This document shows, piece by piece, positions 364-50,554 of a stretch of 64,000 nucleotides of DNA. Position 1 is the stretch's first letter, and each line of letters begins with the position of its first letter. The DNA lies in contig NC_082730.1 in the NCBI RefSeq assembly GCF_030144855.1, positions 14,570,001-14,634,000 on the forward strand. The letters are read 5' to 3'. The stretch is from Hypanus sabinus (lineage: Eukaryota). A model generated the notes under the pieces. The model saw only the letters and a program-made list of their open reading frames with translations. It searched no databases and was not told where the DNA came from. The translations under genes and the position numbers were made by a program.

Positions 364-3300
364 TCATAAGAACATAAGATATAGGAGCAGAATTAGGCCA
401 TTCAACCCATTGAGTCTACTCCACCATTCAATCATGCCTGATTTATTATCCCTCTTAAACTATTCTGCTGCCTTCTTTCTGTAACCTTTGACACCCTTAC
501 TAATCAAGAACCTACCAATCTTTGTTTTAAATATACCCAATGATATGGTCTCCATTTCCTGTGGCAATAAGTTCCACAGATTCACAAGCTTCTGGCTAAA
601 GTATTCCTCCTCAACTCTCTTTGAAAGGGATGCCCTTCTATTCTGAGTCCATTCTGAGTCTGAGACTTTTGGGCCTAGATGCCTTCACCATAGGAAACAC
701 CCTCCCCACATCCATTGGGCTTTTCAATGCTCGACAGCTTTCCATGAGATCCATGGGTATCAGAGATACTTGAATCCACGGATGGGGTCTTTTCATACCA
801 TGGGAAGGGATCCATGGAGAGACTGATGGGACACTGACACGGAGTCCCCACAACTTGAGCCATTTAATGGCGATGAAAATCGAAGCAAAGGAACAGACAC
901 AGGTTCTGTGGAAAATAATCAGTGAACATCTGAAAGTCAAACACACTAAAGATTTCAGCAACTCTGTACCTTGACCAGGACCGACCAGTTTGGAATCTGA
1001 GCAGCTCATCGACCTCTCTGAGTCTCTGACTCCTCGCAGCTGCCTGAACTGCCGTGTCTGCCATTATCCCAGAACACAGCAGGACTCCAGATCAGGACAG
1101 CAGTGATGATACTGTGTATATGTCCGGTGGAAATTAGGGGTACAAGCTCTCTCAGTAGCAAGGAAACAGTCTAAATGGTACCCAACAGTTTGACTTTGGA
1201 ATGGCAGCCTTTGTGTGTATCCAGGAAAACTCCCCATTATGTGAAAGCAGGTAATTGTCAAATACATACAAAATGAATGGTGACTTTAGGGAGAGGGTGT
1301 AATTGTGATTGGATTCAGTGACCTACGACAGCAAAGGAACCCATAAGATTGGTTTTGATATGAAGCCAATAAGGAATCTTACGTCACTGGAAAACTGGAA
1401 AGAGCATTGGCCATAAGACCACAAGATATGAGAGCAGAATTAGGCCATCCTGTCCATTGAGACTGCTCCACCATTCAATCATGGCCGATTTATTATCCCT
1501 CTTCATCTATTCTCCTGCCTTCTCTTTGTAACCTTTGATGCCCTTACTAATCAACCTCTACTCTAAATATACCCAATGATTTGGCCTCCACAGCTGCCTA
1601 TGGCAATGATTTCCACAGATTCACTAGATTTTAGCAAAGTAAATTCCCCCACATCTCTCTTTTAAAGGACATCCTTCTATTCTGTATCTGTGCCCTCTAG
1701 TCCTAGATACTCGCTCTGTAGGAAACATCCTCTCTATATCCACTGGGCTTTTCAATGCTCAATATCTTTCCATGAGCTCCTCCCTCATTCTCCTAAACTC
1801 CAGCAAGTACAGGCCCAGAGCCTTCAAATGCTCCTCATACATTAGGGAAGATTGCCTTCACCTAATATTTGATATCCCAGTATGGTATTTTAATCCTGCC
1901 GAAGGGTTTCGGCTGAAATGATGACTGTACGTTTATCTGTAGATGCTGTCTGGCCTACTGATTTCCGTCAGAATTTTGTGTGTGTTGCTTGGATTTCTAG
2001 CATCTGCAGATTTTCACTTGTTTGTAAAGAATTTTAATCAGCAACCAGAATCCAGAAACTCTGTTTCAATCGTCACTAACTTACTTGGGCTGCTCAGGAA
2101 ATTAGAAAGTTAATGATGACCATAAGACAATGGGACTGTAAGACATCGGAATAGAATTAGGCCATTCGGCCCATACAGTCCATACTGATGACTGATATAT
2201 TATACCTCACTATCAAAGTCTCCTGCCTTCACCCTGTAATCTTTCGAGCCCTTACTAATCAACAAATTATCAAACTCCTCTTTAAATATACTCAATGGCA
2301 TATATTTAAATGAATTCCATAGATTCGCCACCCTCTGGCTGAAGAATTTCCACCTCATCTCTGTTATAATGAAAGGAGTCTGCACTTCCTCCATGTGGAA
2401 TGTGTGGGTTCTCCCCAGGTGCCACTGTTCCCTTCCACAATCCAGAGAAGTATCAGGTAGGTTGATAGTTCATTGTAAATTTTCCTGTGATAAGGTTTGG
2501 GTGAATCACTTTTATCAAGGTTTGCTGGGCTAGTGTGGCTCTAGAGGCTGGAAGGGACTGTGCTGTACTCCATCATTATTGTAATCTGAGGCTTTACCCT
2601 TTTGTCCTGGACTCCTCCATTATAGGAAACACCTTCCCTAAATCCACTCTATCTAGACCTTTCAATATTCCATCAGTTTCATTGAGATCCCCCTCATTCA
2701 AAGACAAAGTCAAAGTAAAAAATTATTATTGAGTACTTACATGTCACCACATACTACTATGAGATTCTTTTTCTGCGAGTATACTTAGCAAATCTATAGA
2801 ACAACAACTGTAAACAGGATCAATGGACAAGAAACTGTGCAAACTTAGGCTTACAGTTTGACTTTATTGTCCCCAAACTTGGCCAGAAAGCCAATGTGAA
2901 AGGAAGCAGTCCTAACACAGACCAATATAGAACAGCGTGTGTCCACTCTTAGGAAAACAGAAGGCACCCTTTATTCACAGTCTTTGCCTCCTGCCAGTCA
3001 GCAAATCTTCTATCCACGCTTGAATCTTTCCAGTAATACAAAGGCTTCTTATCTTGTTTAGCAGCCTCATGTGTGGCTGATGTAAAAGGCCTTCCAAAAA
3101 TCCAAGTCAACAATATCCACTGACTCACCTTTGTTGATTCTGCTGGTAATCTCCTTAAAGAATTCCATCCAATTTTTCAAGCAATATTTCCCCACAAGGA
3201 AACCATATTTTATCATGTGCCTCCAAGTATCATGAAATCTCCTGGGGTTTAGTCTATCTGGTCCTGGTGACTTATCTAACTTCCAAGCCCCTTCTCTACA

Positions 3301-3660
3301 ATAACAAATGCACTCACTTCTGACAATGCCCACCTTGCGTCATACTACCTGTGTCTTCCTCAGTGGAAAAACATTGCAAAATATTTATTGGGTGTGCCCT
3401 CCATTTCTTTGTCTCTCATTATTACTATCTCTCCAGTGTCATTATCCAGTGATCTGATATCCACTGTTGCTTTGATTTTACTCTTTATATGTCTGAAAAT
3501 ATCTTGGTCACATCTTTTATATATTGGCTTGTTTCCCTTTATATTTCATCTTTTCTCTCCTTTACACTTTTCATGTAGCCTTCTGTTGGCTTTTAAAAGC
3601 TTCTCAATTCACTGACTTCTCACTAATTTTTACCATATTATAGAAACTTCCTTTCATTTT
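364..3660 (-). mobile_element. Several short CR1 3' fragments (about 364-750, 1410-1850, 2120-2700, 2880-3660)
   Basis: Repeated CR1 tail ataggagcagaattaggcc; KSPGPD and DFWKAF motifs. Confidence 0.7.
750..905 (-). pseudogene. Paralogue A second IgC2-like exon, truncated
   Basis: ttttccacag|AACCTGTGTCTGTTCC; EPVSVPLLRFSSPLNGSSCGDSVSVSHQSLHGSLP, frameshift, then WYEKTPSVDSSISDT; runs into a CR1 fragment. Confidence 0.72.
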
Positions 3661-3969
3661 TATGACACTGTCTCACAACTCAATACTTATTCCAGCATCT
3701 TCAATGAAGAAACCAGATGTACGAATGGAATGCTCTCAATTTGTCTGGATGTGCAAGTCCAAATATGTTTGAGGTGCTCCACATCCTCCTGGAGGGAGTG
3801 ACAATCTTAACTGTTCGCTGTACTTTCTTTCTACACCGTGGAGGCTGCAATGTGCAGCTTCTAAAAATGAAAAGGAATACCTTACTCTCACTAGAAGTAT
3901 AAGAGCAGCAGGAACAGAGAAACAAAAAAAAAACATTTAAATGATCCTCCCTTGAAATTAGAACTTCAC

Positions 3970-4893
3970 CGTGCTATTGATTTCGATCTCATATCTGCAG
4001 ATCTCTCTATTGTAGAAGATTGTCACATTAACCGTTCTGTCGTGTTTTTCTCCAAGCCTATTGAGGCGGGGCAGTAATATTGATGGGACTGGACGTCTAA
4101 GAATTGATAGTGCATGGTCAGTTCATTGGTATCTGAGATGTTTGGATGCCCAGATGAGGTTATTTCATACGAAGTGTGCTGAATGGGAAGAGGTTTCTGG
4201 AGAGACTCATAGGACACTGACAACAAGCCCCTGAGATGAGAGACATTTTGCTGGTTAAACCAGTTGGTTTCCTCAGCTGTGTAAGTCTAGGAAAGACAAT
4301 CACTGGCCCAGCCAAACTCGTGAGATTGAGGCATCCTTGATCCCCCCCAAACCTCGGTTTGTGTGGATGCTGTGTCCTTTACTACCCTGTTACAAATTAA
4401 CAAAAAGCAGACAGTACACTGCATACGATTAAAGGAATTATATTCATGAATCTTTACTGAAGAGTTAGGAAAGAATAACAAAAAGAAAAGGGCCCATTCT
4501 GTTTAAGCAGTCAAATGTGCACACACTGGAGCTAATCTTGAACTTCTCTGTCGCTCACGTGCAGGGCCCTTCAGGACATTCCTCGCAATCCATCTCGAAC
4601 AAACAGGTCTCCCACCGCATCATATGCTGCGACCGGTTCTCCCCAAAATCTTCTCTCCTCATCTCCTCTTGAACAAAAGCCCCAAGACCAACCTTATTGT
4701 CCCTCACCAAGAAAACCTCCTGCTAATTGGATGGCACACTTTCCACATCATCCCTCATCTTCCACAATGATCCAAACAGGCTGAAAGCAGGGCAGGAGCT
4801 TTGTGAATTAAATAACTACAGCAAAACAGTGAAGATGTGAGCCAGGGCAATACATTGGTGACAGATATCAAATCACAGGAACAGACACAGGTT
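3970..4893 (-). pseudogene. Paralogue A IgC2-like exon (EPVSVPV...YYC), decayed and split by an LTR-like insertion
   Basis: ccccacag|AACCTGTGTCTGTTCC; in-frame TGA at 4868-4870, a 600-bp insert at 4255-4854 and two 1-nt frameshifts. Remnant reads SVSYESLQKPLPIQHTSYE..ISDTNELTMHYQ..HQYYCPAS. Confidence 0.75.
4255..4854. mobile_element. Solo LTR-like insertion in the paralogue A C2 exon
   Basis: Exon frame resumes on both sides; imperfect 4-bp TSD ctgg/ttgg; ends in CA; composition resembles the 44923-45489 LTR. Confidence 0.62.
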
Positions 4894-4954
4894 CTGTGGG
4901 GAGGAATTCAATTTTCAGACACTGAATGAACATTTGAAAATCAAACTCTGCTCT

Positions 4955-5512
4955 GTCACTTTATTAGGTACACCTATTCATCTGTTTGTTAATGCAAATA
5001 TTTAATTAGTCAGTCATGTGGCAGTAATACAGTCCATATGAACAGACCAATATAGTCAAGAGATTCAGTGTTCAGGCAATCAGAATGGGGGGGGGGGGGA
5101 ATGTGATCTTAGTGACTTTGATCGTGGAACGATAGTTGACGCCAGACAGGAAGATGTGAGTATCCAAGAAACTCTTGATACTGTGGGATTTGCACATACA
5201 ACAGTCTCTAGAGTTTGCAGAGAGTGCTGACGAAAACAAGAAAGTATCCAGTGAATGGGAACTTTGCGAGTAAAAATGGCTTGTTAATGAGAGAAGTCAG
5301 AGGAGAGTGGCCGGACTGATTGAAGCTGACAGGAAGATGGCAAGAATTCAAATAACCACACATTATGACAGTGCTGAAGAACATTTGAAAAGACAATGTG
5401 TTAAAGCTTGAAGTGAGTGGGTCACAGCAGTAGAAAAACCCACGAACATACAGTGGCCACTTTATTAGGCATAGGAAGAACTGTACCTAATAAAGTGATT
5501 ACTGAATGGTTA
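4955..5512. mobile_element. Tc1-like non-autonomous element
   Basis: Inverted termini cactttattaggtac / gtacctaataaagtg; transposase 5' remnant. Confidence 0.7.
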
Positions 5513-5869
5513 AAGGCAGAAACTTGTGAGATATCCATCACATGTTCAGTGGCTTTGAGAGGAAAATGAAATTGTGAGTGGGTTCGGAGACCTGCCATAG
5601 AGAGGGAAGCATTTGGCACTGATGTTAATGCAGAGAGAGTGAGGGATGGACAGGGTCTGAATAAAAATCTGATACTCTGTCCTGAGGCTGAATTGGACGA
5701 GGAGGAGATTGCTGTTCTTCAGACACATCCATGAGATGGGCATTTCTCCATTCAGCAAATTTAAACCCAAGATCGGCACAGTGTCACTCCTCAGGACAAC
5801 TGATCCTTCACAGAGGAAACATGGATGAGACATTTAGTTCATTGAGAAATAAATCACTAAGAAACCTAC

Positions 5870-6194
5870 CATTAAATACTTGTAGATATACATTAAATAT
5901 TGGATCATGATTGATCTGTTGATGTAATTCCACAGCTGTACCATCCTGTATCTCCAGAGCTAAGATCATGCATAGTAACAGTAAATATTCCCCGTTCTGG
6001 GTTATCTGTGATTGACACTCGTCCACTCCGTCCGCGTTGCTCATTCGTTTCCACTAAAACTGAATGGTGACGAGTCCATCCATGGCACCAATACTTTGTG
6101 TGCGAGCGGTACTTTGCTTCATAGTGACAATTGATTGCGATTGCACTTATCACAACTCCTGTTACATGTTTCTCTGCCCTCAATGTACCTGAGA
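5870..6194 (-). pseudogene. Paralogue A IgV exon, frameshifted
   Basis: ccttccgcag|TCTCAGGT...AATG|gtaggt; 325 nt versus 321 in gene C. A 4-bp ATCA duplication (5908-5915) gives TGA at 5905-5907; the C' Cys is replaced by His. Confidence 0.9.
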
Positions 6195-8224
6195 CTGCGG
6201 AAGGCATTTTCAAATTTGAAGGGAAAGGAACAACTTAATGCAAAAAAGATATTTTTGAACATGAGATCAAAAACATGTCCAGATCACATTCAGCATGTTG
6301 ACCATAACACCACAGTCAATGGTTTTGGTCTGAAGTGCAGTCAGTGCTGTTACTGTGTCAGTGCTCTCTCCCCTGTGTCAGTACATTGTGGGTTCAATTC
6401 CCACGCCAGAGTCCTGAGCAGAAACCCAGGGTTATCTCCCATCTCACACCTCTCCCTCTCTCCTAATTATACTATCTCCCTCTCTGCTCAGACTTGATGC
6501 AAAGTCTTGACCCAAGTTGTTGACATTTCCCCTGCCCCTGACAGATGTTGCTTGACCCACTGAGTTCATCTAGAGTGTACTCAGAACTCCAGTTTCCCAC
6601 AATTTTAGTGTCTACAAGTATTCAAACTCTGTTCTGGAACTGGGGTTATGCCCCCAAACCAACACTGATTATGTGAAGTCCAGTGCAGGTTGTCACTCAC
6701 TGGATAGGAAACCAAGCAGAAGAATCAAAGTCCACAGCATTTTATTCACAGAGAACCAGCCAGGACCAATCTGTTCTCAGAAACCAATGACTAAAATAAA
6801 AATGAGGAAGAAGGCAGCAGGAGGTTAGATCAGAAAACCGCAGTGACCCGACTGGAATGTGGTATGTGACAATCAAAACACGTTTAGTTATATTAGCAAG
6901 AGAGAAACATTTAAACAGTTCCCAAAGACTGAACAAAAGAGTGAGCGGAGTTGAAATATTTGACCCAAGCAATAGCGAATGTTCTCATCTGAAGCAACAG
7001 TAAACGGCTGGAGCAGAGGATTAATCTGCAATGTCGACCACTCTGCCTCCACAGATCCCACCGGATTCCTTCAGATCTTTTTTTTATTTTTTGCTTGATT
7101 AAAATGTTAGCCATGATGAGTCACTGGGGAAAGTATTCATGGTCAGAAGTTAATAGTGGAAAGGGAACAAGTCCATGTTGAGTTTTGTGAGTGTGAATGG
7201 AAAGTTACATCACCCCTAGTCCAGACCACAGGAGCATTCGATGGCTCTGGGCTGGAGATTAGAAGAATGGGGGGAGTGGGGGGAAAGGTCTCATTGAAAT
7301 CTGTTGAATATTGAAAGGCCTAGATAGAGTGGATGTGGAGAGGATATTTCCTAAGGTAGGGGATTCTACAACTAGATGACACAGCCTCAGAGAACAAGGC
7401 CATTCCTTTAGAACAGAGACGAGGAAGAATTTCTTCAGACATAGGGTGATGTATCTGTGAATCCACTTCCACAGATGTCAGTTGAGGCCATGTCATTGGA
7501 TATATTTGAAATGGAGGTTGATAAGTTCTTGGTTATTAAAGGTGTCAAAGGTTATGGGAGAAGGTAGGTGAATGGGGTTGAGAGAGCCTAATTTTACACC
7601 TAAGCCTTTTGGTCTTATGGTCCTCTAATAAAGACACCAACCTGATGAATCTCTTCTGCTAAATGAATTTTTGAATGTTCAATGCTCGTCCAATGCCAGA
7701 AGTTCTCGTTATCACCTACCTTACCATCTGCCGCTGTTCCAAAACTCAGAGTTATGGACTTGTATCCCAAGGTCCGTACATTGTTCTAGACCTGCCTTGC
7801 TGATAATTCAAACAAACATGAGACACGTGAAAGACACCTGATAAATGGTCTTGGCCAGAAAGGACGACTGTTTACTGTTTTCCAAAGATGCTGCCTGGCC
7901 TGCTGAGTTCCTCCAGGTTTTTGTGTGTGTTGTGATCATTCTATCAAGCCTGTTTTTGGGAATTTGCTGCTGAGGAATGAGTAAAGTGGGAAATAGTTTT
8001 GATGTAGAAGGGGCTTTTCATGCACACTCAGCAGACGTACTTGGCTTCATTCCCTCTTCTCTCTGAAGACTGGTTCCACTATCTGAAGTAACTTTTAAAG
8101 CTCACCTCTTCTGAATTCTATTCCATCAATTTCAGGAGCTCTGACGGGATTTCACTTTGCGTCAGTTAGATGTGAGGGGAAACCAGTTGAATGGAGTTGC
8201 ACATTCTCAAGGGTAAAATCCGTA

Positions 8225-9950
8225 AAACCATAGATATAGGAACAGATTTAAGCCATTTGGCCCATCGAGACTGCTCCGCCATTTCATCATGGTTGATCTA
8301 AATTTTATGTTAGCTCCAATCTCCTACCTTCTCCTAGTATTTCTTCATGCCCTGACCAATCAAGAATCTCTCAACCTTTGTTTTAAATATACATAAAGAC
8401 TTGGCCTCCACAGCTGTCTGTGGCAAAAAAAATTCCACAGATTCACCACCCTCTGGCTAAAGAAATTCATCCTTGACTATGTTCTGAAACAACAACCCAC
8501 CCCCATTTTTAGGTTGAGTCTGCTGGTCTTTGACTCTCACACCATAGGAAACATCTCTAACTCTACTCTGTCAAGGCTTTTCACCATTTGATAGTTTTCA
8601 ATTTGGTCATCCCTTATTCTTCTGAATTCTAATGAATACGGACCCAGAACCAACAGACACTCTTCATATGAGAAGGCAATTAATCCTGTAAACTTTTATG
8701 TGAACCTCCTTTGATCCCTTTCCAATTTCAGCACATCCTTTCTTTGATAAGGGTTCTAAACCAGCTCACAATACTCCAAGTGAGGCCTCACCAATGCTTT
8801 ATAAAGTTTCAACATTACATCCTTGTGCTTATATTCTATTCTTCTTGAAATGAAAATTAACATTGCATTTGCCTTTCTCACCAGAGACTCAAGCTACAAA
8901 TTAACCTTTAGGGAATCTCACACAAGGACTCCCAAGTACCTTTGTGTCTCAGATTTTTGTATTTACTCTCCATTTAGAAAATGGTCAAATCTTTCATTTC
9001 TTCTACCAAAGTGTATGACCATACACTTCCCAAAACTATATTCCATCTGCCATTTCTTCACCCATTCTTCTAATGTGTTTAATCCCTTCTGTAGCCTCTC
9101 TACTTTCTCAAAACTACCTCCAACTATCTTCATATCATCTGCAACCTTTGCAACAAAGACTTCAAATCCATTCTCCAAATCATTGACATATAAGGTAAAA
9201 ATAATTAATCCCACACAGACCCCTGTGTAACACCATTAACCACTGGTAGCCAACCAGCATAGACTCCCTTTATCAACATACACTAAATACTGGAGGAACT
9301 CAGCAGGCCAGGCAGCATCTATGGATAAAAGCAGAGATGACATTTCAGGCCAAAACTCTTTGGCAGGACTGGAGAAAAATAATCTGAGGAGTACTCAGCT
9401 ACTCATCTGCACATTATCTCTTGTTTGTGATTTGAAGATTCCCTTTATTCCCACTCTTTGCCTCCTGTCAGTCTGCCACTGCTTTATCCATGCTAGAATC
9501 TTCCCTGTAATACCATGGACTCATAGCTTGTTAATCAGCCTCATGTGTGGTACCTTGTCAAAGTCCTTCTGAAAATCCATGTACATAACATCATCTGATT
9601 CTCCTTTGCCTAACCTGCTCATTATTTCTTCAAAGAATTCCAACAAATTTTTCAGGCAAGATTTTCCCTTAAGGAAACCATGCTGACTATGGACTATTTA
9701 ATAATGTGCCTCCAAGTACCCTGAAACCACATCTTTAACAATCAACTTCAACATTGTTCCAACCATTGAGGTCATTCCAAATGGCCTATAATTTCCTTTC
9801 TTCTGCCTCTCTCTATTTTCGAAGAGTGGAGTGACATTTGCAATTTCCCATTCCTTCAGAACCAATCCCGAAGCAACTTATTCTTGAAAAAGCACTACTC
9901 ATGTCTCCATAATTTCTTCAGACACCTCTTTCAGAACCCTGGCGTATGCT
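8225..9950 (-). mobile_element. CR1 LINE fragment
   Basis: LYVNDLE..KVADDMK..WQMEY; CR1 3' tail. Confidence 0.85.
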
Positions 9951-11730
9951 GTCTGGTCCAGGTGCTTTATTTACTTTCAGACCATACAGTTTCAGTAAGT
10001 GTTCAGTGATCATTTCAGTGTTGAGGTGACTGGTTCAGAAGCCTGATGGCTGCACTGTTGTTGAACCTGTTAGTTTGGGACCTGAGGCTCCAGTTCTCTG
10101 CTCGGCAACAGCAAGAAGACAGCATGTCTGGAAGATGTGGGTCCTTGATGATGGATTCTGCTCTCTTGTGGCAGGACTACTTTACAGATGTGCTCACTGG
10201 TGGGCTGGGCTTTACCTATCAGCTGATCAGATCAGTCTTAACCAACCTCCACACAGACCGTCCCTGAGTAATGAATGTGTCTGTTTTTACAGATGCCTAT
10301 AAGTCAATTTTACCCTTGTGTCAGAAAACACAACAAATATCTATACTTCCATGATACTGTAATGGAGAGCATCAACTGCAAATAAAACTGAGATGAAAGA
10401 GTAATTCTGAAAAGTGGAGCGAAAGAAAACCAGTTCTGTTATTTGTAGGAACAAAGAACACAGAACAGTACAGCACAGTACAGGCCTTTCAGCACAGAAT
10501 ATTGTGCCAATTTATACTTCATGATCAATCTAACCCTTCCCTCCTACACAGCACATCACCCCCTATATTCATACAAACATGTACGTGCATAACTAAGAGC
10601 CTCTAAATGTCCTTATTGAGTCAGCCTCTACCATCTTGCCTGCAGTGTTTTCAGGGACCCACCACTCTCAGTATATAAAAAAAAAACATCCTCTCAGCTT
10701 TTGTCCACTCACCTTAAATGGACGTTCTCTGGCATTGGTCATTGTCACCATGGGAAAGAGGTACTAGCTGTCCACTCAATCTATGCCTTATATTCCACAA
10801 TACTCCAAGTGTGATCGAACTGGAGGATTATTGATTTGCAACATTACCTTGTGGCTCTTGATCTCAATCCCTCAACTAGTGAAGCCCAGCACATCCTACA
10901 CCTTCTTTAACACCCTTACAACTTGCACAGCAATTTTGAGTTATCTGTGGACTTACACCCCAATATCCCTCTGTTCCTCCACATTGCTCAGACTCCTGCC
11001 ATTAACCTTGTAATTCAAGTTCACTCACCCAAAGTGTATCACTTCACATTTTTCTGTTAAGCTCCATCAATCACTTCTCCATCCAGCATTGCATCCTGTC
11101 TTTACCCTGTTGTGACTGATGACAAGGCTCTAGACCATCCACAATACCGACAATCTTCGTGTCACATGCAAACATTACTGTGCAGAATTCGCAGGCACAT
11201 ATCAAAATATTCTGTAAAGTGAAGATGCTTTCAAAAATAATGAAATGAGAAGTAAACAGTAAAAACAATAAATCAGGTCAATATTTGGTGAGACCATCCT
11301 TTGCCTTTAAAACTGCATCAATCCTCTTAGGTGCACTGTTGTGCCGTTTTGTAAGAAAATTATCTGATGGATCGCTACAGTTCTTCTTCAGACTTTGGCA
11401 GTTGTGCTTGCCTCTGAATCTCCAGATAATCTCAAAGAGCCTCAATGATGTTGAGCTCAGGGTGCTGTGGAAGTCATAGCTTCTGAAACCATATAAATAA
11501 ACCTACGACTTTAGCATAGTACTGTACATTGGAGTTTTGAATTCAATAATATTACTGAGGCTCATTCATTTGTAGATGTGTCTTTAAATCAGATTGTCAC
11601 AACCTGGGAATGAACTGAATTGTCTTTTATCCTACACAGCACTCAACTGACTGGATCTGCTCTTTAAAGCAACACCCTTCCACCTCTAAGCCAGATCTCT
11701 GAAGTGAAACTGAGGTTGATGAAAGGTTCT

Positions 11731-13105
11731 TGTTATGGCTTATAGCTCCAAAACAGTAAAATAATTCAAAGGAAAACAAGGGAGCCGAGAAATGTGAATC
11801 TTAGTTTGTGTTTTTACTTTAAGTGAGGTGCGCATGTATTGCGTTGGTGTCATGATATATGCTTGTAATCTGTATTTAATTATTTAAACAAACAATATGT
11901 ACAATATTATTCAAATATTGTAAAATATGAAATACACAACATTCCTCCCTGCTTAGTTGTAAATAGCAACTCAATATAGTATGCACCTCAACTATTTACA
12001 AAGTATAATACATCATGCAGCTATTTGCAGGTATCCACAGCATAAAAAAAATTTAATTTGACCCATTCAGGCCTAACGATTTAATTGCTGTGGAGGATTT
12101 CTTACTCTTGTGGGACAATATCTTTCCTGACCAGTAGGATCATTCTGCCTGATCATTAAAACTTGTGGCTGTGAAAAAATCTCAGATTCCTTGGTGGTGG
12201 TGGTTATAGGAACTGACTCTGAGACTGCAGGATGTGGTTCTGACAGTGCAGGACATTTATCTTCTCCTTCACTTTTCTTTTACTAGTTTGAGCATCTTGA
12301 TGTTGGGAAGATGCAGTGAGTTCACAGGAGTATTCACTTTTGAATCCTTCTGTTTCTCCCATTACAATCTGCTCTCTCTCTCTTGGTTTCCTCATCCACA
12401 TCATCATCTGATGAAACCTATGCTTTTGATTCTCCTTTGACTCCTTTCTTTCATTATTCCATCTGGACTTTGGTCTTTGCATCTACTCTTACAAACAGCT
12501 TTTAGTCTCTCACTTGAAGTTCATGCAATCAACATAATACATGCAGAGTAGATTCTTTATATTCACAAAAGCTGAATGCTCGCAACTTTCTTGAAACTTC
12601 TTGAACTCTGTCCCCACTTAAAACCAAGCCACATTTCACAAATAACTGCCTGACTAACATGCCAGAATCTTTCACTGATATGTTGCCTATAAAAGCTGTT
12701 GTAGTCAGACCAGTGTTTTAATCATTTTCACACTTCTACTAAACAGCATGGTCCTTCCTTGTTTCAATATGATTTCCAACCAGTAGTACAGAGATTAGCA
12801 CCAACATCTATTAGTCCTCTGTTGGGCAGTGGTTCATGTTGTTCTGCATGGAGACAGTTGTGACATCATCCAGTACCTTTTTAAATTTGTTTTCAGTTGG
12901 CTTTGTTGCAGGGAATATGGCATGCAAATTATTGAATGGATTTCCAATCAAGTAGTAGTTGTTAATGTGGCTTGTTTTTGCTGTATTTCACTGGTGCAAA
13001 TGTCATTCCCACAGGATTACTTTTTCCCCTGGATAAGTTCTGCAGGTTTCAGCTTGGAAACTTTGAAAAGCCATTCAAATTCATTTTCTGGAATGACTGA
13101 AACAG
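11731..13105 (-). mobile_element. 5'-truncated Gypsy (K02A2.6-like): protease remnant, RBM25 insert, integrase tail, PPT, 3' LTR (11731-11941)
   Basis: Protease-like SPVSVIPENEFE..KVLDDVTTV; tail CPALSEPHPAVSES; purine tract at 11942-11954 next to a TG..CA LTR. Confidence 0.8.
12265..12849 (-). pseudogene. RBM25: Intronless RBM25 fragment (RRM domain and flanks) captured inside a Gypsy element
   Basis: Manual translation gives VGNHIETRKDH.., TTTAFIGNISVKDSGMLVRQLFVKCGLVLSGDRVQEVSRKLRAFSFCEYKESTL..LHELQV..KLFVRVDAKTKVQM..DEETKR..SEYSCEL. This matches RBM25 (TTTVFVGNISEKASDMLIRQLLAKCGLVLSWKRVQGASGKLQAFGFCEYKE). Several stops and frameshifts. Confidence 0.9.
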
Positions 13106-13206
13106 GTGAATGACTTAATCCTGCTCCTGTGTTTATGGTCTTATGGTCTTGACTCCCTCAAGAAAATCCAGGAGCCCAAATGTGATCTGTTTGACATGTA
13201 TAAAGT

Positions 13207-13565
13207 TTTATTCTCATCCAAGCCAAAAGGATAAATGACTCATTAACATCAGCAGTTTATAAACAAGTATCTTAACTGATTACTTATTAATTATTGGAAT
13301 ATCCAACAGCAACAGTCTCAGGCGTTTAAATCCATAGAAGAGAGTTTAATAGAGTAAAATGGTTTTAAGCAATTCACAGCTGTGATAGGGTTAAAAATTG
13401 AGATCAGTGGGAGTGACATGTTGGAAATGGAATGCTAAAAATAAGTCATTGTCTTGAAGTACGGTAACATAATTTTTTCACCTTCATGAAGTTAACAGTT
13501 TAATGACGAGAGGATTACTCTTCCATAAAGTGGGAAGAAGTATGAATATTTTATCTTGTGCAAAA
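13207..13565 (-). pseudogene. Paralogue B1 last exon / 3' UTR remnant
   Basis: 13400-13565 aligns by eye with 48950-49140; AATAAA at 13207-13212. Confidence 0.55.
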
Positions 13566-13892
13566 TTCAAAAATCCAGTAAACAGAAGCCTTCAGGTTAA
13601 CTTATGGACCCGTCTGAGAGGAGCTGATACATTGCCGCTCTGCAAAAGGCAACAGTCAAATCTTCAGACTCGTTGACACTGTGAACTTTGCTTTAGAGTT
13701 GTGCCTGGAGCTTGGACTCCAATATATTCACATCAAGCATTCTGCACACACAGTGTGTCAACATCTTGTCGATATCATCTGCAAATATCTTTGGATTGAT
13801 CATTGGATAAGAAAAGGTCAATGTGTTTAAATGTCTTTCCTTAAGTGATGAGTATATTTGAAAGCAAATTCCACTGATGTCCAGAGGCCTAC

Positions 13893-13982
13893 CTCAGTTT
13901 CCCTTGTGAACCACAAGACTGAAATAGTGTAGTTCATCAGAGAGTGAAGAGCAGCCAACGACCAAGCTTCCATATCATGAAA
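13893..13982 (-). pseudogene. Paralogue B1 TM exon with 1-nt deletion
   Basis: cccctttggtcag|TTTCATG...GAG|gtaggc; 90 nt versus 91 in gene C. Reads FMIWKLGRWLLFTL then TGA TGA; the shifted frame resumes LMNYTISVLWFTRETE. Confidence 0.82.
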
Positions 13983-15763
13983 CTGACCAAAGGGGAAGAG
14001 ATACAGAACTGATGAAATGAAACAAGATGGCTTTGTGTTCGAGACATTTACCTCCTGTTTCTTCTGTAACCTTAGTGGAGAGGAGTGAGGTAAGTAAGCA
14101 GAGCCAGAGGAGTTCAACTAGAAGAGTAAACTGGTGTTGACTGAATGACTGGATGGGGGAAGGGGAACAACCTGTGATTACTAGTTACAGACACATAATC
14201 ACTGGGTCTTGGTCTTTGAATTGAAAACTACACTGTGAAAATGGAATTAGGAAAAATTGAGAAATTAGAATTGCAGAGGTGCTTTTATGATACTGAAATG
14301 GCATTGGATGAAGTGGACATAGCTGTAAGAAAAATGTCATCCAGGGCATAACTTCTTCTCATTGCCACCATCAGGGAGCAGGCGAGGAACATGAAGACAC
14401 ACTCTCAATAATTTAGGAACAGATTCTTCCCCTCCGCCATCAGATTTCTGAAGACAAAATGAACCATCCCATGAACACTACCTCACAGTATTTTGCTTTA
14501 GTTTTGCACTACTTATGAATATATATTTATTTTTTTTATATTCATTTATAGTTTTTTATGTATTGCAGTGTACTGCTGCCACAAAATAACACATTTCATG
14601 ACATGTGCCAGTGATATAAAAGCTGATTCTGATTCTGTGAGGAAGACAGAAATAGAGTCCATGTAAGTAAATATGAAAAATAATGAAGGATAGATGACCC
14701 AATATCAAACCGAGAAAAATAATCATGCGTGATCAAAAGTATCTCTTTATTCCCTGGACAACAGAGGGAAAAGCAAAATTGAGTTCAGCAGTTTCAAAAG
14801 GCCCCACGCACAGCAGAAGATCTGACTTACCAACAAGAGACTTTCTAAATTGGAGAAACAATGGGGTAAATCAATCAGGGCAATGAAAATGACCAGATTA
14901 TAATGCACTTATGATGATAAGAAGGTAGGAACAATGTAGGAATAAAAAGAAATTGCCTCAAGACAATGGTGTCAACTTTCATTGCAGCCATTCCTTAATT
15001 TTATTATGGTTATTGGATTTACTGAGTATGCCCGCATGAAAACAAATCTCAGGGTTGTATACAGTGGCATATATGTACATTTCTGAATTGGACTCAGTTT
15101 GCAGTTCCTCAGCCCAAATAACCAGCTGATCAAGATCCTAGGTAATTCTTCAAAACCCTATTCACTGAATAATTACCTGTTTGAGTGTTATCTGCAACTT
15201 ACACATTTTTCCATAGTTACTGGCATTGAAAATTTGGCTAACACAGCAAGTTGTTACCTTATTGTTTATTGCTTTACCTGCAATCTTTGAGTCAATGCTA
15301 TGTCCGGTAATATCACAGCAAGAGAAAGCAGCATCCTAGGGTTTGGCAAATGCACAAATGTAAGTCATCTCACAGCATGGGAGGAGGTTAGTGACGGAGT
15401 AGTGATGGAGAACATTGTATGACAACCTTTGAGTGCAGCAAATGATTCTAATTTCCAAAAGATAAACATTAGAAGAAGAGACTCATCGTGCTTTTCATTG
15501 TGCATTGGTTGTTAAGAGTGGATATATCTGAGGGATATAAATTATGAGATGTACAGGTTGGATAGAGGACAGCAAACTTTCCCATTCTCAGAGGTGAATA
15601 AATCTAGATGACATAGATTTGGAAGGGATTTGAAGGGATTGTTCTTACCCAGAGAGTGGTGGCAACAGAGTCACAGTCAGAGTTTGGAAAGTGTCTGAAT
15701 GCGGTCTTAAATCATCTCTCAATAAAAGCGATGGGCCATGTGCTGAAAGATAGGGTTTATATA

Positions 15764-16107
15764 CAGTGCTGTGCAAAAGTCTTTTGCACACGTAAAATAA
15801 TTTTGTATAGTGAAGATGTTTTCAAAAACAATTAAATGAAAAGTTTCTGAATAACAAAGAGCAGGAAAATCTTTAAAACTTCATCACTGCCTCTAGGGTT
15901 TTTGTCATGCAGTTCTATAAGAAAATCAGCTGGTAGGTTGTTCCAAGAATATTGGAGAACTTGCCACAGTTCTTCTGCAGACTTTGACTGTCTCACTTGC
16001 TTCTGTCTCACCAGGTAATCCCAGACAGCCTCAGTGATGTTGAGATCAGTTCTCTGTGGTGGCCATACCATCTGAAACAAGGGGCTTAATATATTTGCAC
16101 AGTACTC
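15764..16107 (-). mobile_element. Tc1 deletion derivative
   Basis: TA-flanked TIR cagtgctgtgcaaaagt; transposase C-terminal motif WPPQRTDLNITEAVW. Confidence 0.78.
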
Positions 16108-16849
16108 TACATGGATGGGCAATGGAAAGCCACATGGCCTTTGTCTGTGCTGTACGTCTCTGGGACCGTATGAATCTGTTACACAACAGCAGGATGTGAA
16201 CCCGGATCCTTATCATTCAAAGTAGATTTATTTTCAAAGTGTATGTATGTCACCATATAAAATTCAGATTTACTTTCTTGTGGACATAATAAATCTATGG
16301 AATAATAACCACCACAGAATCAATGAAAGACCATCCAGCTAGAGTGTTCAACCAGAGTGCAGAAGACAACTATGCAAACACAAAAATAAAGGAATAAGTA
16401 AATAAGCAATAAATATCAAGAACATAAGATGAAGAGTCCTTGAAAGTGAGTCCATTGGCTGTGGGAACATTCAATGTTGGGGCAAGTGAAGTTGAGTGAA
16501 GTTATCCCTGTTGGTTATCCATTATCCATTCCAAGTATCTACTTCCAAAATAAAAATGAATATCAACTTTTATCTCTAAGTTATTACAGACTATTCAGAG
16601 AGATTAATTTATCTTGCAGTCTCAGGCCCAAAGCATGCAGAAGAACATTGGTTATAGTACTGGTTGTGGAACTGAAAACAATAGTCCCACTGCAGTTCCG
16701 CCCAAATAGATAAAGTTCTAATTTACCCCCTTAATCATCGCGATGAGCCAAATGGCCTAATTCAGTTCCTATATCTTGTGGTCTTACTTGGGTGCAAGGC
16801 CATCATACTTTCCTGAAAAAATTCCAACAGGATTTTCATGCAATGAAAA

Positions 16850-17335
16850 ACAGTTCTTCTGTGACAAACAGTTCATAAACGCATGTAGACATGGTCAAGA
16901 GACTCAGTTGTTGACCATGCCTAATATTAGAATGAAGAGCAAATACGATTTTAGTAACTTTGACTGTGGAATGATAATTGGTTCCATATGGAGAGGTTTA
17001 AGTATCTCAGAAGCTGTTGATCTCCTGAGATTTTCATGCACAACAGTCCCTTGAGTTTACAGAGAATGGTGCAAAAAACAAAAAACAATATCTACTGAGT
17101 AGAAATTCTGAGAGCAAAGGTGCCTTGCTAATGAGGTAGGTCAGAGAAGAATGACCAGGCTGGTTCAAGCTGACAGAAATACGACAGGAATTCAAATACT
17201 CATGCATTCTGACAGTGGTGTGCAGAACAACAAGTCAAACCTTGAACTGAATGGGCCACGGCAGCAGAAGACTATGAATATACACTCAGTAGCCACTTGC
17301 TGAGGTACGGGAGGTACCTAATAAAGTGACCACTG
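16850..17335. mobile_element. Tc1-like element at a site paralogous to 4955-5512
   Basis: Same terminus followed by the same unique flank (taaaggcag..tgagatatccatca). Confidence 0.7.
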
Positions 17336-19379
17336 AGTTTTAAAGGCAGCTACTTGAGAGATATCCATCACACGTTCGGTGGCTTCCAGGAGAGAATGAA
17401 ATTGTGACTGTGTTCGGTGACTACCCAGTAGAGGGGAAAACTTTTGGCACTGATATTAATACAGAGATAGTGAGGGATGAGCAGGGCCTGGATAAAGATC
17501 TTCCAATCTATTCTGAGGCTGAGCAAAAGGAGTAGGAGACTGCTGTTCTTCAGACGCATCCACAAGATGGGCATTTCAGCAAGCTTAACCCCATGACACT
17601 GATTTCAATGCCATAATGTTATTTGTCGCAGTGATCCCTGCAGAGTGAGATCAGATTCCAGCAATATGATAATCAATTGGCCATTATAGAAGGAGGAACA
17701 AGCTCAATGGGCTGAATGGTTGAATTTTTCCCCTATGTCTTATGGTCTGAAGTGATTGGGAGAAAATGGAGCAGGTTGTTTATGTGAAGCATTCATTGGT
17801 ACTTCCCCAAATTCTGCTTTGTAGGACAAGTAAATAAGATTGAAGTTCTTAACTATACCCTTTGAGAATTGTTTTGAGACTTCCTGGTACAAGGAAAGGT
17901 TCTTGTTCAGAATCAGAATCAGGCTTATTTTCACTGTCTTCAGATGTGAAATTGTTGTTTTGCAGCAGATGAAAGCAAAGCAAGTTCCTTCCCTTAGACC
18001 ATCAACAAGCTCAGGTTTATCAGGTCCAAGTTCACAAGTGGGACCACTGTTTCTGGAATTATCTCCAGCTCATCAACACCTAACAGATAACCCTGAGCCG
18101 AAGAGGTTAAGAGCTCCAATCAGTCTTTGGTGTTACTGCTTCACATCCTCATATTACAGCTGAAGGATATCCCTCCTTCTCAGTGGGGTATTTCAAAATT
18201 CAGAATCCAAATTAAATTTATTATCAAAGTGCATATATGTCACCAAATACTAACCTAATTATAATTGCAAAAATGTGGTTCATCTTCTCATTTTCATGAA
18301 CATTTATTGTTCACTCATGGGTCACAGTCACAGATCAGTACTGAGAAAAGTTACACCTTCTATTTGCAGATTCATACCCTGATGACCGTTGCAAGCTGCA
18401 ATAATTTTCATTTTCAGCTCACTCAGTTTATTCAGCACCCAGCTGTTCTTTCCATTGCTCATTCTTCTTTAAGACCTTTGTACAGTGACTGGAAATGTTC
18501 ATGCTGTGTCTCTTTTTCACTCCATTTCTATAAAATGTGTTATGAAAGGTCAATGATCATGCACTTTATCAAAGTTGAAAAACTTCATTGCAAACTTATT
18601 ATCGAAGTATGTCTGTGTCACCATATACTGTCCTGAGTTAAATTTCCTTACAGGTATTCACAGCGGAACAAAGAAATGCAAAAGAATCAAATTAGACTAT
18701 TCACAAAGACTGACGCACTACCAAACTGCAAAAGAAGGCAAACATTGCAAATACAACAAAAAATTAACAACATAACTAAATAAATAAGACTAAGATATGA
18801 ATTGCAGACACCTTTAAAGTGAAGTCATAGGTTGTGTTCAGTGAGTTAAGTTATCCACTCTGGTTCAGGAGCTGGATTGCTGAACTGTTCCTGAACATGG
18901 CCCATCATTCAGCTCCATGAAATGTAGGAAGGACGGATGCTCTATAGACCAAGAGCCTTGTTTAGACATGTCGGTCACATATTCCAAAGACCCTTTTCCT
19001 TAATTTTTCATAGACTACATTTGCACGGCTAAAGCAGTGATTAACCTCTGATCAATATCTGCTTTTGAGGAAAGAATGCTGTCAAGGTAGGAAAAGTGGT
19101 CTATTTTTTAAGGTTTAAATCATCTTTTATGGAGGTTTGGATAAATATTGGTTAGATGGTGGCTGGTATAGGACCTGTTCCTTTTTTTAAATATTCAAAA
19201 CAAGATTCAAGGCTCTATATGCCTTGGCAAAGGCATTCAGGGTACATTGGAAGTCTTCTTCAGAATGTGTTTTGATGGTGTTGTCATCCGCATACAGAAG
19301 CTCCATGATAGTGATGGTGCTGACCTTGTTCTTGGACTTGAGCCAGTTGAGGTTGAAAATTCTGTTGTCCATTCTATAC

Positions 19380-35528: not shown

Positions 35529-37724
35529 GTCTAGGGGAAACCATTGTCTGCCACTAAACCGTGCCTCACGTTTGCATATAGAGATGCTGTGTATGCACCC
35601 CAGCACAAACCCGCAACATAAAATATCAGGCAGTACACAATGTGCGTTTGAACGATCACACTTTATGAATTTTACTGTAACTATGGATTAGTAGAGAAAT
35701 AAAAATATAAAATAAAAAGACGCCAAAAATAGAAACTATACAGTTAGTGCTCATGTTGGAGCACACACAATATCCTCGGTCCACCATTCAATTTCCTCCA
35801 AACTGCACGACCCTCGGACAGGGACCAACCCGCTGTGGTCTATCAGAGCACTTCCCGCACGTCCTCCCTCTTCACTTCTCCTCGCCGAATTTCCCATGCA
35901 TCAACCCCAGATCCCACACATACAGATAGAATAACAAGACTCCCATTGGCTAGTCCCCCCATTATCAGTAGTTATAACCCACACATTTCAGCTACAGAGA
36001 AAATTGCCTCATTGTTTCAATGTGAGTATTATTAACAGTAAGTTAATACTAATCAGGAAGATATTGGTAACAAGCGGCTGGTTCTGGGGTTGGTGGGGGG
36101 CTTTACCTCCGGTGTGCATTGTTTGTAGTTCTACCACCCATGCCGCACGAGGTACCTGAAAGCCTCTGTATTGTAAATATCATTTGCCGTCCCAGATAAA
36201 GATGCTCTTTTGGCCATAAAATTGTCTAGTGGTCCTTTAGTAAAGTAGAAGTTACCACAGATTTCTGGCAACGAGGTGAACTGGTTTTGTGGATGTGTCG
36301 GCACGTTTCGAACAGGAGTTGCGCGGGGATGAGGAGCCTTGCATTTCGGATGGCTACGTTCAGGACAATCGGTGAATTTGTGGAGCAAAACGAGGACTGG
36401 CTGGAGTATGAGGAAAGGTTGGGACACGTTTTCTGTGCTAATGGAATTACTGAGGAGGCTAAGAAGTGCTCTATTCTCCTGAGTGTGTGTGGGGCAAAGA
36501 CTTACAAGCTGATAAGGAACTTAGCCATGCCGCAGAAACTGGGGGAAATTCCATATGACGAACCGGTCAAGCTCATGGGGAACCACCACAATCTGAAACC
36601 TTCAGTGATAGTCCAACAGTTCAAGTTTCACAGCCATTTCAGGAAGCCAGGTCAGTCTGTGGTCAATATTGTGGTTGAGCATTGCGATTTCGAAGCCGTG
36701 TTGGATGACCTGCTCTGTGACAGATTAGTATGCAGCATTAATAATGACGCCGTACAATGCCGCTTGTTGGGAGAAAGCCCACCGTTGACTTAGAGATTGC
36801 CCAAGGCATGGAGCTGGCTGCTAATAATGCTAAGGATATCCAGAAAGGACATAGGGGGGTTGCAGTCGGCAGTCAGGAGGGAGACTGGTAAACAGGCAAA
36901 GCGGGTGGAAATGTTTTTGGTGTGGAGGGATGTACTATGCAAATATTTGCAATTTCAAAGTTACTGTCTGCCATGCTTGTAGCAAAAAGGGACATTTAGC
37001 TAAAAAGTGCAGGAGCATAAAGGGCAAGGTTAAGCCTGGGCAGGGGAAAGCTCAGCAGATTCAGGCAGCCTCACACCACCTAGCAGAAGCAGACGAGGAG
37101 GCAGCGTGTGCCTACAACATGTTTGGTGTGGAAACGGATGAGGGACCACCTGAATCTTATTATGCCACAGTCACTGTTCAGGGAATGGACAAAAAAGTTC
37201 AAGATTGATTCAGGGACTATTGGATTGGTCATTAGTGAAGAGACCTACAGGAGGACATGGGGGTCCAACCTGCCTTCCATCAGACCGTCTAAGCGCAAAC
37301 TCAGGACCTATACTGCGCAGCCCATAGGGGTGTTATATGTGGGTATTTCAGCCGGGGTTCAGAAGGCTGAAGCCAGGCTGGTGATAGCTAAGGGCAGTGG
37401 GCCCAGTCTTTTGGGCCACGATTGGCTTCACAAAATTCGCCTCAACTGGCACGAAATTAAGTATGCACACATGGCGGAGGACATTCTGCAGCGGTATTGT
37501 GACGTTTTCAGGACGAGCTGGGTGCACTGAAGGGCGTGACCGTGAAACTCCATGTTGACCCTGAGGCCACACCACGTTTTTTTAAGCCCAGGTCAGTGCC
37601 CTTTGCCATAAAAGGCAAAGTCGAGGAGGGGCTGGAATGTTTACAGGGGATGGGCATCATTGAGCCCATCCAGTTTTCAAGGTGGGCAGCTCCCATTGTT
37701 CCAGTTTTGAAGGCAGACAAAACG

Positions 37725-50463: not shown

Positions 50464-50554
50464 CTTTTTGTCTCTCGTGAACCATGTGACAGTGATAGTC
50501 CAGATCCCCAGCAGAGCAAAGAGGACCCAACGTCCCACTCTCCATATCACGTAA
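50464..50554 (-). CDS. Gene C exon 4, transmembrane segment with Arg residues
   Basis: cccctttgttcag|T TAC GTG...AAA AAG|gtaagt; 91 nt, phase 2-0. Encodes (S)YVIWRVGRWVLFALLGIWTITVTWFTRDKK; paralogous exon at 13893-13982. Confidence 0.85.

What the first reader, a model, noticed from the sequence alone, without database searches (positions are those of the whole stretch)
11731..13105. Gypsy element carrying a captured spliced RBM25 mRNA fragment
Seen: a protease remnant ending KVLDDVTTV is followed directly by about 585 bp encoding the RBM25 RRM region without introns. A Gypsy integrase tail, PPT and LTR follow. RT-RNaseH-integrase is missing. Established: LTR elements can capture cellular mRNA by template switching during reverse transcription. 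Inference: this is such a capture; the 3' junction sits in a GA-rich microhomology (gaaggagaag). There is no poly(A) tail or LINE-type TSD.
Basis: partly seen in the sequence, partly recalled or inferred. Interest (0 to 1): 0.82.

Follow-up and report, generated by a model that had tools for sequence, protein, structure and literature searches.

The report
LTR retrotransposon carrying spliced RBM25 exons
A decayed, half-missing copy of a jumping gene that long ago picked up four intron-free exons of the host splicing factor RBM25 and then spread that chimera to roughly hundreds of copies in this and related genomes; it is a real but already-known kind of event.

Summary
The core observation holds. 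On the minus strand, 12807-12251 is an intron-free copy of four consecutive RBM25 exons (tblastn E 1e-34). It is dead: 8 stops and a frameshift. The three internal exon-exon joints are seamless at intron positions conserved between frog and teleost.

It is not a lone pseudogene. Contigs from three other organisms put 11738-13211 at about 100-900 times single-copy depth. Single RRM positions are covered by 60-80 distinct contigs, and their majority letters restore RBM25 residues. The stretch ends in a polypurine tract plus a 211-bp TGTTGTG...CATAACA LTR, the same 3' layout as a complete two-LTR element elsewhere in this window. There is no poly(A).

Not shown: "Gypsy", "protease" and "integrase tail" had no profile or homology support. 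The 5' LTR and target duplication are absent here. The template-switch mechanism and the GA microhomology could not be tested.

That is within a codon of a conserved exon start, which hints at splicing.

The scan has 20 further unchecked notes linking RBM25 to LTR or Gypsy elements elsewhere in this genome. Verdict: a new member of a known kind (LTR-mediated retroposition), of moderate interest.

The parts
12853..13211 (-). High-copy element sequence upstream of the insert. It holds a protease-like remnant read by eye (NTGA at 13133-13122, LIGNPF near 12950, 'KVLDDVTTV' at 12879-12853). The 5' edge of the repeat at this locus is about 13199-13211, so the copy is truncated and lacks gag and the 5' LTR.
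   Evidence: Depth is 3600-6200 (X4) and 5000-8900 (X2), against 20-40 in the next bin. Pfam, PDB and atlas searches were negative. No LTR match occurs elsewhere in the window.
12808..12852 (-). Junction zone of unassigned origin, ending in TAA TAG directly before the RBM25 part. It is in the same reading frame as both neighbours.
   Evidence: No significant similarity to RBM25 exon 3 or the N-terminus. Three diverged X1 contigs end their match at 12798-12807 (table 8).
12251..12807 (-). Intron-free RBM25 fragment covering four consecutive coding exons (frog residues 51-242, including the RRM). Exon-exon joints fall at 12637|12636, 12579|12578 and about 12433|12432. It carries 8 in-frame stops and a frameshift near 12380.
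   Evidence: tblastn E 1e-34. Nucleotide alignment gives 71% identity to frog CDS with no insertion over 6 nt.
12076..12250 (-). Element sequence downstream of the insert. The ORF end reads ...RYCPTRVRNPPQQLNR, with a stop at 12075-12073 (pol or integrase C-terminal-tail-like).
   Evidence: The tail motif R-x-P-P-x-x-L-N-x-stop is shared with the complete LTR element at 36013-39278. Depth is 4200-16000 (X4). The homologue search found nothing.
11942..12072 (-). A 118-nt untranslated spacer followed by a 13-nt polypurine tract, AAGCAGGGAGGAA (11954-11942).
   Evidence: The layout matches the two-LTR element in this window, which has a 137-nt spacer and PPT AAAGGGGGAGAAG.
11731..11941 (-). 3' LTR of 211 bp, TGTTGTG...CATAACA, with imperfect terminal inverted repeats. 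It is the outer end of the element.
   Evidence: High-copy depth stops between bins 11738-11871 (1187/1727) and 11604-11737 (24/36). A contig from organism B bridges into the flank (X2 record 10).

Best explanation
Window 11731-13211 (minus strand) is an old, 5'-truncated, mutationally dead copy of a non-autonomous LTR retrotransposon family. In that family the RT-RNaseH-integrase core has been replaced by spliced exons of the host gene RBM25 (four coding exons including the RRM). The inferred history is as follows. First, a single RNA-level recombination joined element RNA to processed RBM25 mRNA in the sense orientation. Second, the chimera kept the cis signals (LTR, PPT and presumably PBS and packaging region). 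Third, it was copied in trans by proteins of autonomous relatives to about 10^2-10^3 copies. Fourth, this particular insertion predates the split of the window's species from at least three other sequenced organisms and has since decayed. Shown: the RBM25 identity, the splicing, the multi-copy status, the LTR-type 3' end, the absence of poly(A), and orthologous presence elsewhere. Inferred: the single origin, mobilisation in trans, and the recombination mechanism.
For: RBM25 identity comes from tblastn at E 1e-31 to 1e-35, with names.

Splicing: intron positions are conserved between frog and teleost. The three internal joints are seamless in the window and no insertion exceeds 6 nt.

Multi-copy status: summed contig depth across 12274-12809 is 1565-6030 (X4) and 2169-7963 (X2). 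Single-copy contigs in the flanks have depth about 7 and about 17. Distinct contigs covering single RRM positions number 63/82 at 12662, 61/72 at 12674 and 39/49 at 12797. The same relative depth profile appears in all three runs.

Family majority letters at 12797, 12785/12784, 12674, 12662 and 12372 change the window's codons to P, P, E, D, D. These are the residues of genuine RBM25 at those positions (one search read). So this copy is a decayed member of a family founded by a more RBM25-like sequence.

LTR-type 3' end: the PPT plus a TGTTGTG...CATAACA block end exactly where the high-copy depth ends. A complete element in the same window has LTRs at 36013-36259 and 39050-39278 and a 5-bp CTCAT target duplication. 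It shows the same order: R-x-PP-xx-LN-x-stop tail, a 120-140-nt spacer, a 13-nt GGGAG-containing PPT, then an LTR starting TGTTGT.

The fragment is internal to the mRNA, with no 3' UTR or poly(A).

Orthologous locus: contigs bridge both element edges into low-copy flanks in organisms A, C and B at about 2%, 4% and 6.5% mismatch (records 7, 19, 11, 10).

Precedent for the mechanism and structure is PMC5131818.
Against: No second LTR, PBS or target-site duplication exists at this locus. Its LTR nature therefore rests on terminal features and on analogy.

No search recognised the flanks as protease or integrase.

LTR bins have lower depth (1200-2300 in X4) than the internal bins, whereas a two-LTR family should give the opposite.

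I never saw the sequence of another copy. I saw only depth, variant and coordinate tables, and summed contig depth is not a true copy number.

Only a few listed contigs cross the junctions, and the best ones are probably the orthologous locus rather than paralogues. No RNA evidence was found.
Confidence: 0.75

Rival explanations
1. This rival keeps the same object but proposes a different capture mechanism at the 5' junction. An element sat upstream of or inside RBM25 intron 3. A read-through transcript was spliced from a cryptic donor just after the protease region onto the acceptor of the next exon, and the following introns were removed normally. Only the 3' junction was then made by a reverse-transcriptase template switch back to element RNA. 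This is the classical retroviral transduction route (Swain and Coffin 1992, as cited in PMC5131818).
For: RBM25 homology begins at 12807. By alignment to frog CDS the exon 3/4 boundary maps to 12809|12808. Nothing upstream resembles exon 3 or the N-terminus, although exon 3 is conserved among vertebrates. The element side ends ...AATAG, which fits the exon side of a donor. A random breakpoint would fall within 3 nt of an exon border only about 5% of the time, and within 9 nt about 15% (exons are 50-189 nt). An unchecked first-stage note reports the same coincidence for the PARD3B capture in this window.
Against: The boundary is read in a copy with about 29% nucleotide divergence from frog CDS, so it is uncertain by several nucleotides. 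Weak, non-significant matches to exon 3 can be drawn by eye. Elements of this type are not known to carry a splice donor in pol. The species' own RBM25 exon borders were not available. The 3' end also lies within about 12 nt of an exon border, which this model does not explain.
Confidence: 0.35
2. This is an ordinary LINE-made processed pseudogene of RBM25 that happened to land in old retrotransposon debris and was later trimmed by deletions. The element and the RBM25 piece never moved together.
For: LINE reverse-transcriptase remnants lie nearby (8963-9865). This locus lacks a 5' LTR and a target duplication. The copy is heavily decayed.
Against: The RBM25 part itself is present at about 100-900 times single-copy depth, with dozens of distinct contigs per position, in two independent genomes. 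The fragment lacks the mRNA 3' end and poly(A) that LINE retrocopies keep. The depth profile runs without a drop across both junctions.
Confidence: 0.04
3. The repeat unit is not an LTR retrotransposon. It is another kind of amplified DNA, such as a DNA-transposon-borne or segmentally or tandemly duplicated block, that contains an RBM25 retro-fragment. On this view the 'PPT/LTR' reading is a coincidence.
For: No retroelement protein domain is recognised in the unit. No LTR pair is present here. The depth of the putative LTR is not higher than that of the interior.
Against: A 13-nt purine tract abuts a TGTTGTG...CATAACA block that ends exactly at the copy-number step. Close architectural parallels exist with a bona fide two-LTR, 5-bp-TSD element 24 kb away. 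A DTGA-like motif followed by an ILG-x-DFL-like motif occurs at retropepsin spacing (read by eye). No tandem arrangement and no second copy occur in the 64-kb window.
Confidence: 0.1

Closest known systems
LTR-mediated retrocopies and chimeric non-autonomous LTR elements (Tan et al. 2016, Genome Res, PMC5131818; maize Bs1; HERV-K/FAM8A1)
   Same: A spliced host mRNA fragment replaces part of the internal ORF of an LTR retrotransposon in the sense orientation. There is no poly(A) and no L1-type duplication. Both ends of the mRNA are truncated. The chimera can be re-mobilised as a non-autonomous element.
   Different: The copy number is far higher here (order 10^2-10^3, against one to a few loci in the fly, zebrafish, chicken and mouse cases described). 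The family is shared by several species. The 5' junction coincides with an exon border, whereas that paper reports short microsimilarities at arbitrary points. Microsimilarity could not be examined here.
Retroviral oncogene transduction (read-through or splice plus non-homologous recombination model)
   Same: Host exons without introns are inserted in place of replication genes. The result is defective and depends on a helper. A 5' junction at a host exon acceptor is typical of this route.
   Different: There is no evidence of an infectious virus, an env gene or a selected function. The captured piece is an internal fragment of a splicing factor and is now a pseudogene in this copy.
The PARD3B-carrying LTR element at 36013-39278 of this window
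   Same: It has the same 3' architecture (tail motif, spacer, 13-nt PPT, LTR starting TGTTGT and ending ACA). Its pol is likewise interrupted by foreign coding sequence soon after the protease.
   Different: It is complete, with two LTRs and a 5-bp CTCAT duplication, and retains gag, a zinc knuckle and the start of RT. It has no detectable nucleotide or protein similarity to 11731-13211, so it belongs to a different family. Its cargo was not checked by me.
LINE-type processed pseudogene
   Same: An intron-free, non-functional copy of a host gene.
   Different: It has no 3' end of the mRNA, no poly(A) and no flanking duplication, and it is amplified together with its flanks.

Membership tests
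LTR-mediated retrocopy / host-gene-carrying non-autonomous LTR retrotransposon | The host-derived segment is spliced (introns absent at conserved intron positions). | tested here: met
   Three internal exon-exon joints (12637|12636, 12579|12578, about 12433|12432) are seamless. Introns at these sites measure 110-2248 nt in mudskipper and frog.
LTR-mediated retrocopy / host-gene-carrying non-autonomous LTR retrotransposon | The host segment is flanked on both sides by sequence of one LTR retrotransposon in the same orientation, replacing internal ORF sequence. | tested here: inconclusive
   Both flanks are high-copy. The 3' side ends in a PPT plus a TG...CA LTR. No retroelement domain was recognised by Pfam, PDB or homologue searches.
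LTR-mediated retrocopy / host-gene-carrying non-autonomous LTR retrotransposon | No poly(A) tail and no L1-type target duplication bound the host segment. | tested here: met
   Homology ends inside the CDS at about residue 245 and runs straight into element sequence.
LTR-mediated retrocopy / host-gene-carrying non-autonomous LTR retrotransposon | Two LTRs and a 4-6-bp target-site duplication. | tested here: not met
   No match to 11640-12080 occurs anywhere else in the 64-kb window. This copy is truncated at about 13211. The feature may be met by other copies, which I could not read.
LTR-mediated retrocopy / host-gene-carrying non-autonomous LTR retrotransposon | Microsimilarity between element and mRNA at the switch points. 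| not testable with these tools
   This needs the autonomous element and the host's own RBM25 sequence, and neither was retrievable.
LTR-mediated retrocopy / host-gene-carrying non-autonomous LTR retrotransposon | The same chimera is present at multiple loci (re-mobilisation). | tested here: met
   The evidence is indirect. Summed depth is 100-900 times single copy, and 60-80 distinct contigs cover each RRM position in two organisms. Diverged contigs (80-83% identity) reach across 12807 (X1 records 3-6).
Ty3/Gypsy (Metaviridae) superfamily | pol domain order PR-RT-RH-IN and RT phylogeny. | not testable with these tools
   RT, RNase H and the integrase core are absent from this copy, and the autonomous relative was not found.
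Ty3/Gypsy (Metaviridae) superfamily | A recognisable retropepsin domain. | tested here: inconclusive
   NTGA and LIGNPF motifs lie about 60 residues apart when read by eye. There was no Pfam hit at E<=10, no PDB hit, and no BLASTP similarity to the protease ORF of the neighbouring LTR element.
LINE-mediated processed pseudogene | The 3' end of the mRNA with poly(A), and a flanking 7-20-bp duplication. | tested here: not met
   The fragment is internal (frog residues 51-242 of 814) and has no A-run at its 3' edge.
Functional RBM25 paralogue | An open reading frame. | tested here: not met
   There are 8 in-frame stops between 12807 and 12380, plus a frameshift near 12380.

The most novel reading that the evidence does not exclude
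One LTR-retrotransposon lineage in this (reportedly ray-like) genome acts as a serial exon transducer. It picks up host exons by splicing of read-through transcripts, so that 5' junctions fall on exon acceptors, and it amplifies the chimeras to hundreds of copies. The RBM25-RRM chimera, originally in frame with the protease region, would be one of several independent captures (PARD3B, myosin, RABEP1 according to unchecked notes). This would be a vertebrate LTR counterpart of plant Pack-MULEs, and the cargo RRM might have aided its own RNA's packaging or spread.
Probability: 0.15. Interest if true: 0.75.

Novelty: new member of a known kind. Interest (0 to 1): 0.45.

Why it matters
LTR-mediated capture of host mRNA is documented in animals, but mostly as single or few-copy loci. 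This case is different in three ways: an internal fragment of a splicing factor has been carried to roughly hundreds of copies, it is shared by several species, and it sits in a genome where other host genes seem to have been captured in the same way. It offers a natural series for asking how such captures arise (template switching or splicing) and whether they seed new exons or regulatory RNAs. The particular copy in this window is a dead, truncated fossil and adds little by itself.

Tried and rejected
1. Pfam scans of all protease-like, tail-like and gag-like pieces found only a sub-threshold RRM_1 hit (E 0.069) on the RBM25 piece.
2. PDB sequence searches and a protein-atlas look-up on the protease-like pieces gave nothing usable.
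3. The search for homologous proteins on the 5'-junction piece and on the tail piece found no candidates. I therefore could not fetch other copies or the autonomous parent.
4. The representative search returned only genuine RBM25 orthologues and no element chimeras.
5. No cartilaginous-fish RBM25 appeared among the 120 hits listed. Gar RBM25 was not on record for a locus look-up. Exon borders therefore come from frog and mudskipper.
6. I tested whether 12808-12987 is decayed RBM25 exon 2/3 rather than element sequence. It was not significant at nucleotide level (p 0.19 and 0.55) or protein level (p 0.19-0.84).
7. Self-comparison of the window by blastn and tblastx found no second copy and no relative of this element.
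8. The raw-read run X7 laid nothing.
9. The RNA-run search found no RNA holder, which is no evidence of silence.
11. The gag-like reading of 13600-14117 was dropped. That stretch is low-copy and has no Pfam support.

Full report
**What is there.** All features of the finding lie on the minus strand. Reading 13211 down to 11731, the order is:
- 45 nt of unassigned sequence ending in TAA TAG;
- an RBM25-like stretch (12807 to about 12251);
- an ORF end reading ...RVRNPPQQLNR, with its stop at 12075-12073;
- a 118-nt spacer;
- a 13-nt purine tract, AAGCAGGGAGGAA (11954-11942);
- a 211-bp block, TGTTGTG...CATAACA (11941-11731).

**RBM25 identity.** A phmmer search of 1.84 billion representatives with the 62-residue RRM piece returned RBM25 orthologues (best E 1.3e-14). 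One of them is named RNA-binding protein 25 by UniRef, and a further search listed hundreds of named RBM25 proteins. tblastn of these proteins against the window gives a single locus, 12804/12792 to 12261. E-values are 1e-31 to 1e-35 and identity is 50-59%. The locus is interrupted by 8 in-frame stops and one frameshift near 12380.

**Spliced or not.** I fetched the RBM25 genes of Periophthalmus magnuspinnatus (L001) and Xenopus laevis (L002) and rebuilt their exons exactly.
- Intron positions in this part of the gene are identical in the two species. The exons begin GTPMIPV..., VLVPTV..., KCGLVLSW..., (A)FGFCEYK..., SAKPES... and ...DINAIEMEEDKRD.
- The window stretch aligns to frog CDS at 71% nucleotide identity, with no insertion longer than 6 nt.
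- The three internal exon-exon joints map to 12637|12636, 12579|12578 and about 12433|12432.
- The corresponding introns are 110-2248 nt in the two reference genes.

The fragment is therefore derived from spliced mRNA. It covers four whole exons (frog residues 51-242 of 814). It lacks both mRNA ends and has no poly(A).

**Where the junctions are.**
- *5' side.* Homology starts at 12807, and the frog exon 3/4 border maps to 12809|12808. Exon 3 is conserved among vertebrates, yet the 60 residues and 73 nt upstream show no significant similarity to it or to the N-terminus.
- *3' side.* Homology ends between 12262 and about 12243, within about 12 nt of the exon 7/8 border.
- *Microhomology.* This cannot be judged without the element's intact pol and the host's own gene.

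**Is it part of a mobile element?** This is the key test, and it was run by laying public contigs on 10800-14800.
- *Depth.* In three runs from three coded organisms, summed depth rises from single-copy level to high values exactly between 11738 and 13211. Single-copy contigs have depth about 7 in X4, about 17 in X2 and about 2 in X1. Within the zone the depths are 1200-16000 (X4), 1700-25000 (X2) and 14-380 (X1). The RBM25 bins are included, at 1565-6030, 2169-7963 and 33-144.
- *Distinct contigs.* Single positions inside the RRM are covered by 60-80 distinct contigs in X4 and X2. One parental gene cannot produce that.
- *Copy number.* Summed contig depth is not a true copy number, so I read this only as order 10^2-10^3 copies.
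- *Family majority letters.* At 12797, 12785/12784, 12674, 12662 and 12372 the majority differs from the window. The changes turn its codons into P, P, E, D and D, the residues genuine RBM25 has at those positions (compare). The window copy is thus a decayed member of a family founded by a more RBM25-like sequence.
- *Junction-crossing contigs.* Diverged contigs (80-83% identity) from organism A reach across 12807 (records 3-6).
- *Orthologous locus.* Contigs at 2-6.5% mismatch bridge both element edges into the low-copy flanks in organisms A, C and B (records 7, 19, 11, 10). This very insertion is therefore orthologous in other taxa, and old.

**Is it an LTR element, and is it Gypsy?**
- The outer end at 11731 coincides with the copy-number step. 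A PPT followed by TG...CA termini with inverted ends is the canonical 3' end of an LTR retrotransposon.
- A complete element in the same window gives a direct comparison. Its LTRs lie at 36013-36259 and 39050-39278, with a 5-bp CTCAT duplication. It has a gag-like ORF, a zinc knuckle (Pfam E 0.003), a protease-like region and the start of RT.
- That element shows the same 3' layout: tail ...PRKPPDRLNL-stop, a 137-nt spacer, PPT AAAGGGGGAGAAG, and an LTR beginning TGTTGT and ending ACA.
- The two elements share no detectable sequence similarity. This is an architectural parallel, not membership of the same family.
- At the locus under study there is no 5' LTR, PBS or target duplication. The copy is truncated at about 13211.
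- No search recognised the protease-like or tail-like pieces.
- 'LTR retrotransposon' is therefore well supported. 'Gypsy' is plausible but untested.
- One oddity remains: the LTR bins have lower depth than the interior.

**Mechanism.** The structure matches LTR-mediated retroposition as described by Tan et al. 2016 (PMC5131818). There, a host mRNA fragment replaces internal ORF sequence, lacks poly(A), and can be re-mobilised as a non-autonomous element. That paper attributes the junctions to microsimilarity-guided template switches.

Here the 5' end of the cargo coincides with a conserved exon start. A random switch point would do so only about 5-15% of the time. A splice from the element into the host exon within a read-through transcript (the retroviral transduction route) is therefore a serious alternative for that junction. 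I rate it at about 0.35. Both routes give the same product.

**Context from the scan.** The index lists 21 first-stage notes mentioning RBM25 in this genome, one of which is this stretch itself. Those shown all place it in LTR or Gypsy elements on other pieces of the genome. Other notes report PARD3B, myosin and RABEP1 captures. One follow-up, on the myosin case, calls the genome stingray-like. These notes are unchecked and I used them only as leads. My independent evidence for multiple copies is.

**Verdict.** This is a real feature and a new member of a known kind. It is uncertain on the superfamily and the mechanism, and off by about 45 nt at the 5' junction. This particular copy is a dead, truncated fossil, and the family as a whole is the interesting object.

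Noticed in passing
window 14284-14685: A short repeat with enormous summed contig depth (8,000-117,000, against about 10 for single copy) in all three runs. Copies differ by variable internal deletions between 14452 and 14552-14573, and many have T-rich loose ends. It looks like a very abundant SINE-like element.
   Followed up: no
window 36013-39278 (+): A complete LTR element with LTRs of 247 and 229 bp (85% identical over 176 nt), a 5-bp CTCAT target duplication, a gag-like ORF, a CCHC zinc knuckle, a protease-like region and the first ~60 residues of an RT-like region. Unrelated coding sequence then follows up to a ...PRKPPDRLNL-stop tail. The first-stage note calls the cargo PARD3B; I did not check that.
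   Followed up: partly
window 39837-44315 (-): Two different retroelement pol fragments in a GC-rich (46-54%) stretch. The first is an integrase-like ORF of 303 aa (39837-40745) with a zinc-finger piece at 40776-41042. The second is an RT / RNase H / integrase run at 41951-44315 (Pfam rve 2e-15, RVT_1 5e-21).
   Followed up: partly
window 5105-5746 and 16947-17577: A direct repeat of about 640 bp at 74% identity, 11.8 kb apart, bracketing the region that holds the RBM25 element. It could be two copies of a dispersed repeat or the LTRs of an older, larger element.
   Followed up: partly
window 15835-16209 (-) and 11172-11489: Tc1/mariner-type transposase C-terminal remnants. The piece at 11172-11489 lies just outside the LTR end of the RBM25 element and matches 15763-16078 at 77%.
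   Followed up: no
RBM25 orthologues P0007-P0025: Many short predicted RBM25 proteins from distant animals end just after the conserved ...FRDT(H/Y)K motif and run into apparent intron sequence. This suggests a widely conserved intron-retention or early-termination isoform after that exon.
   Followed up: no
window 13655-14145: A low-copy repeat (a few copies at 83-88% identity in organism B contigs of 1.3-2.4 kb). It also matches window 50471-50716 at 68%. Its gag-like appearance in translation has no profile support.
   Followed up: partly
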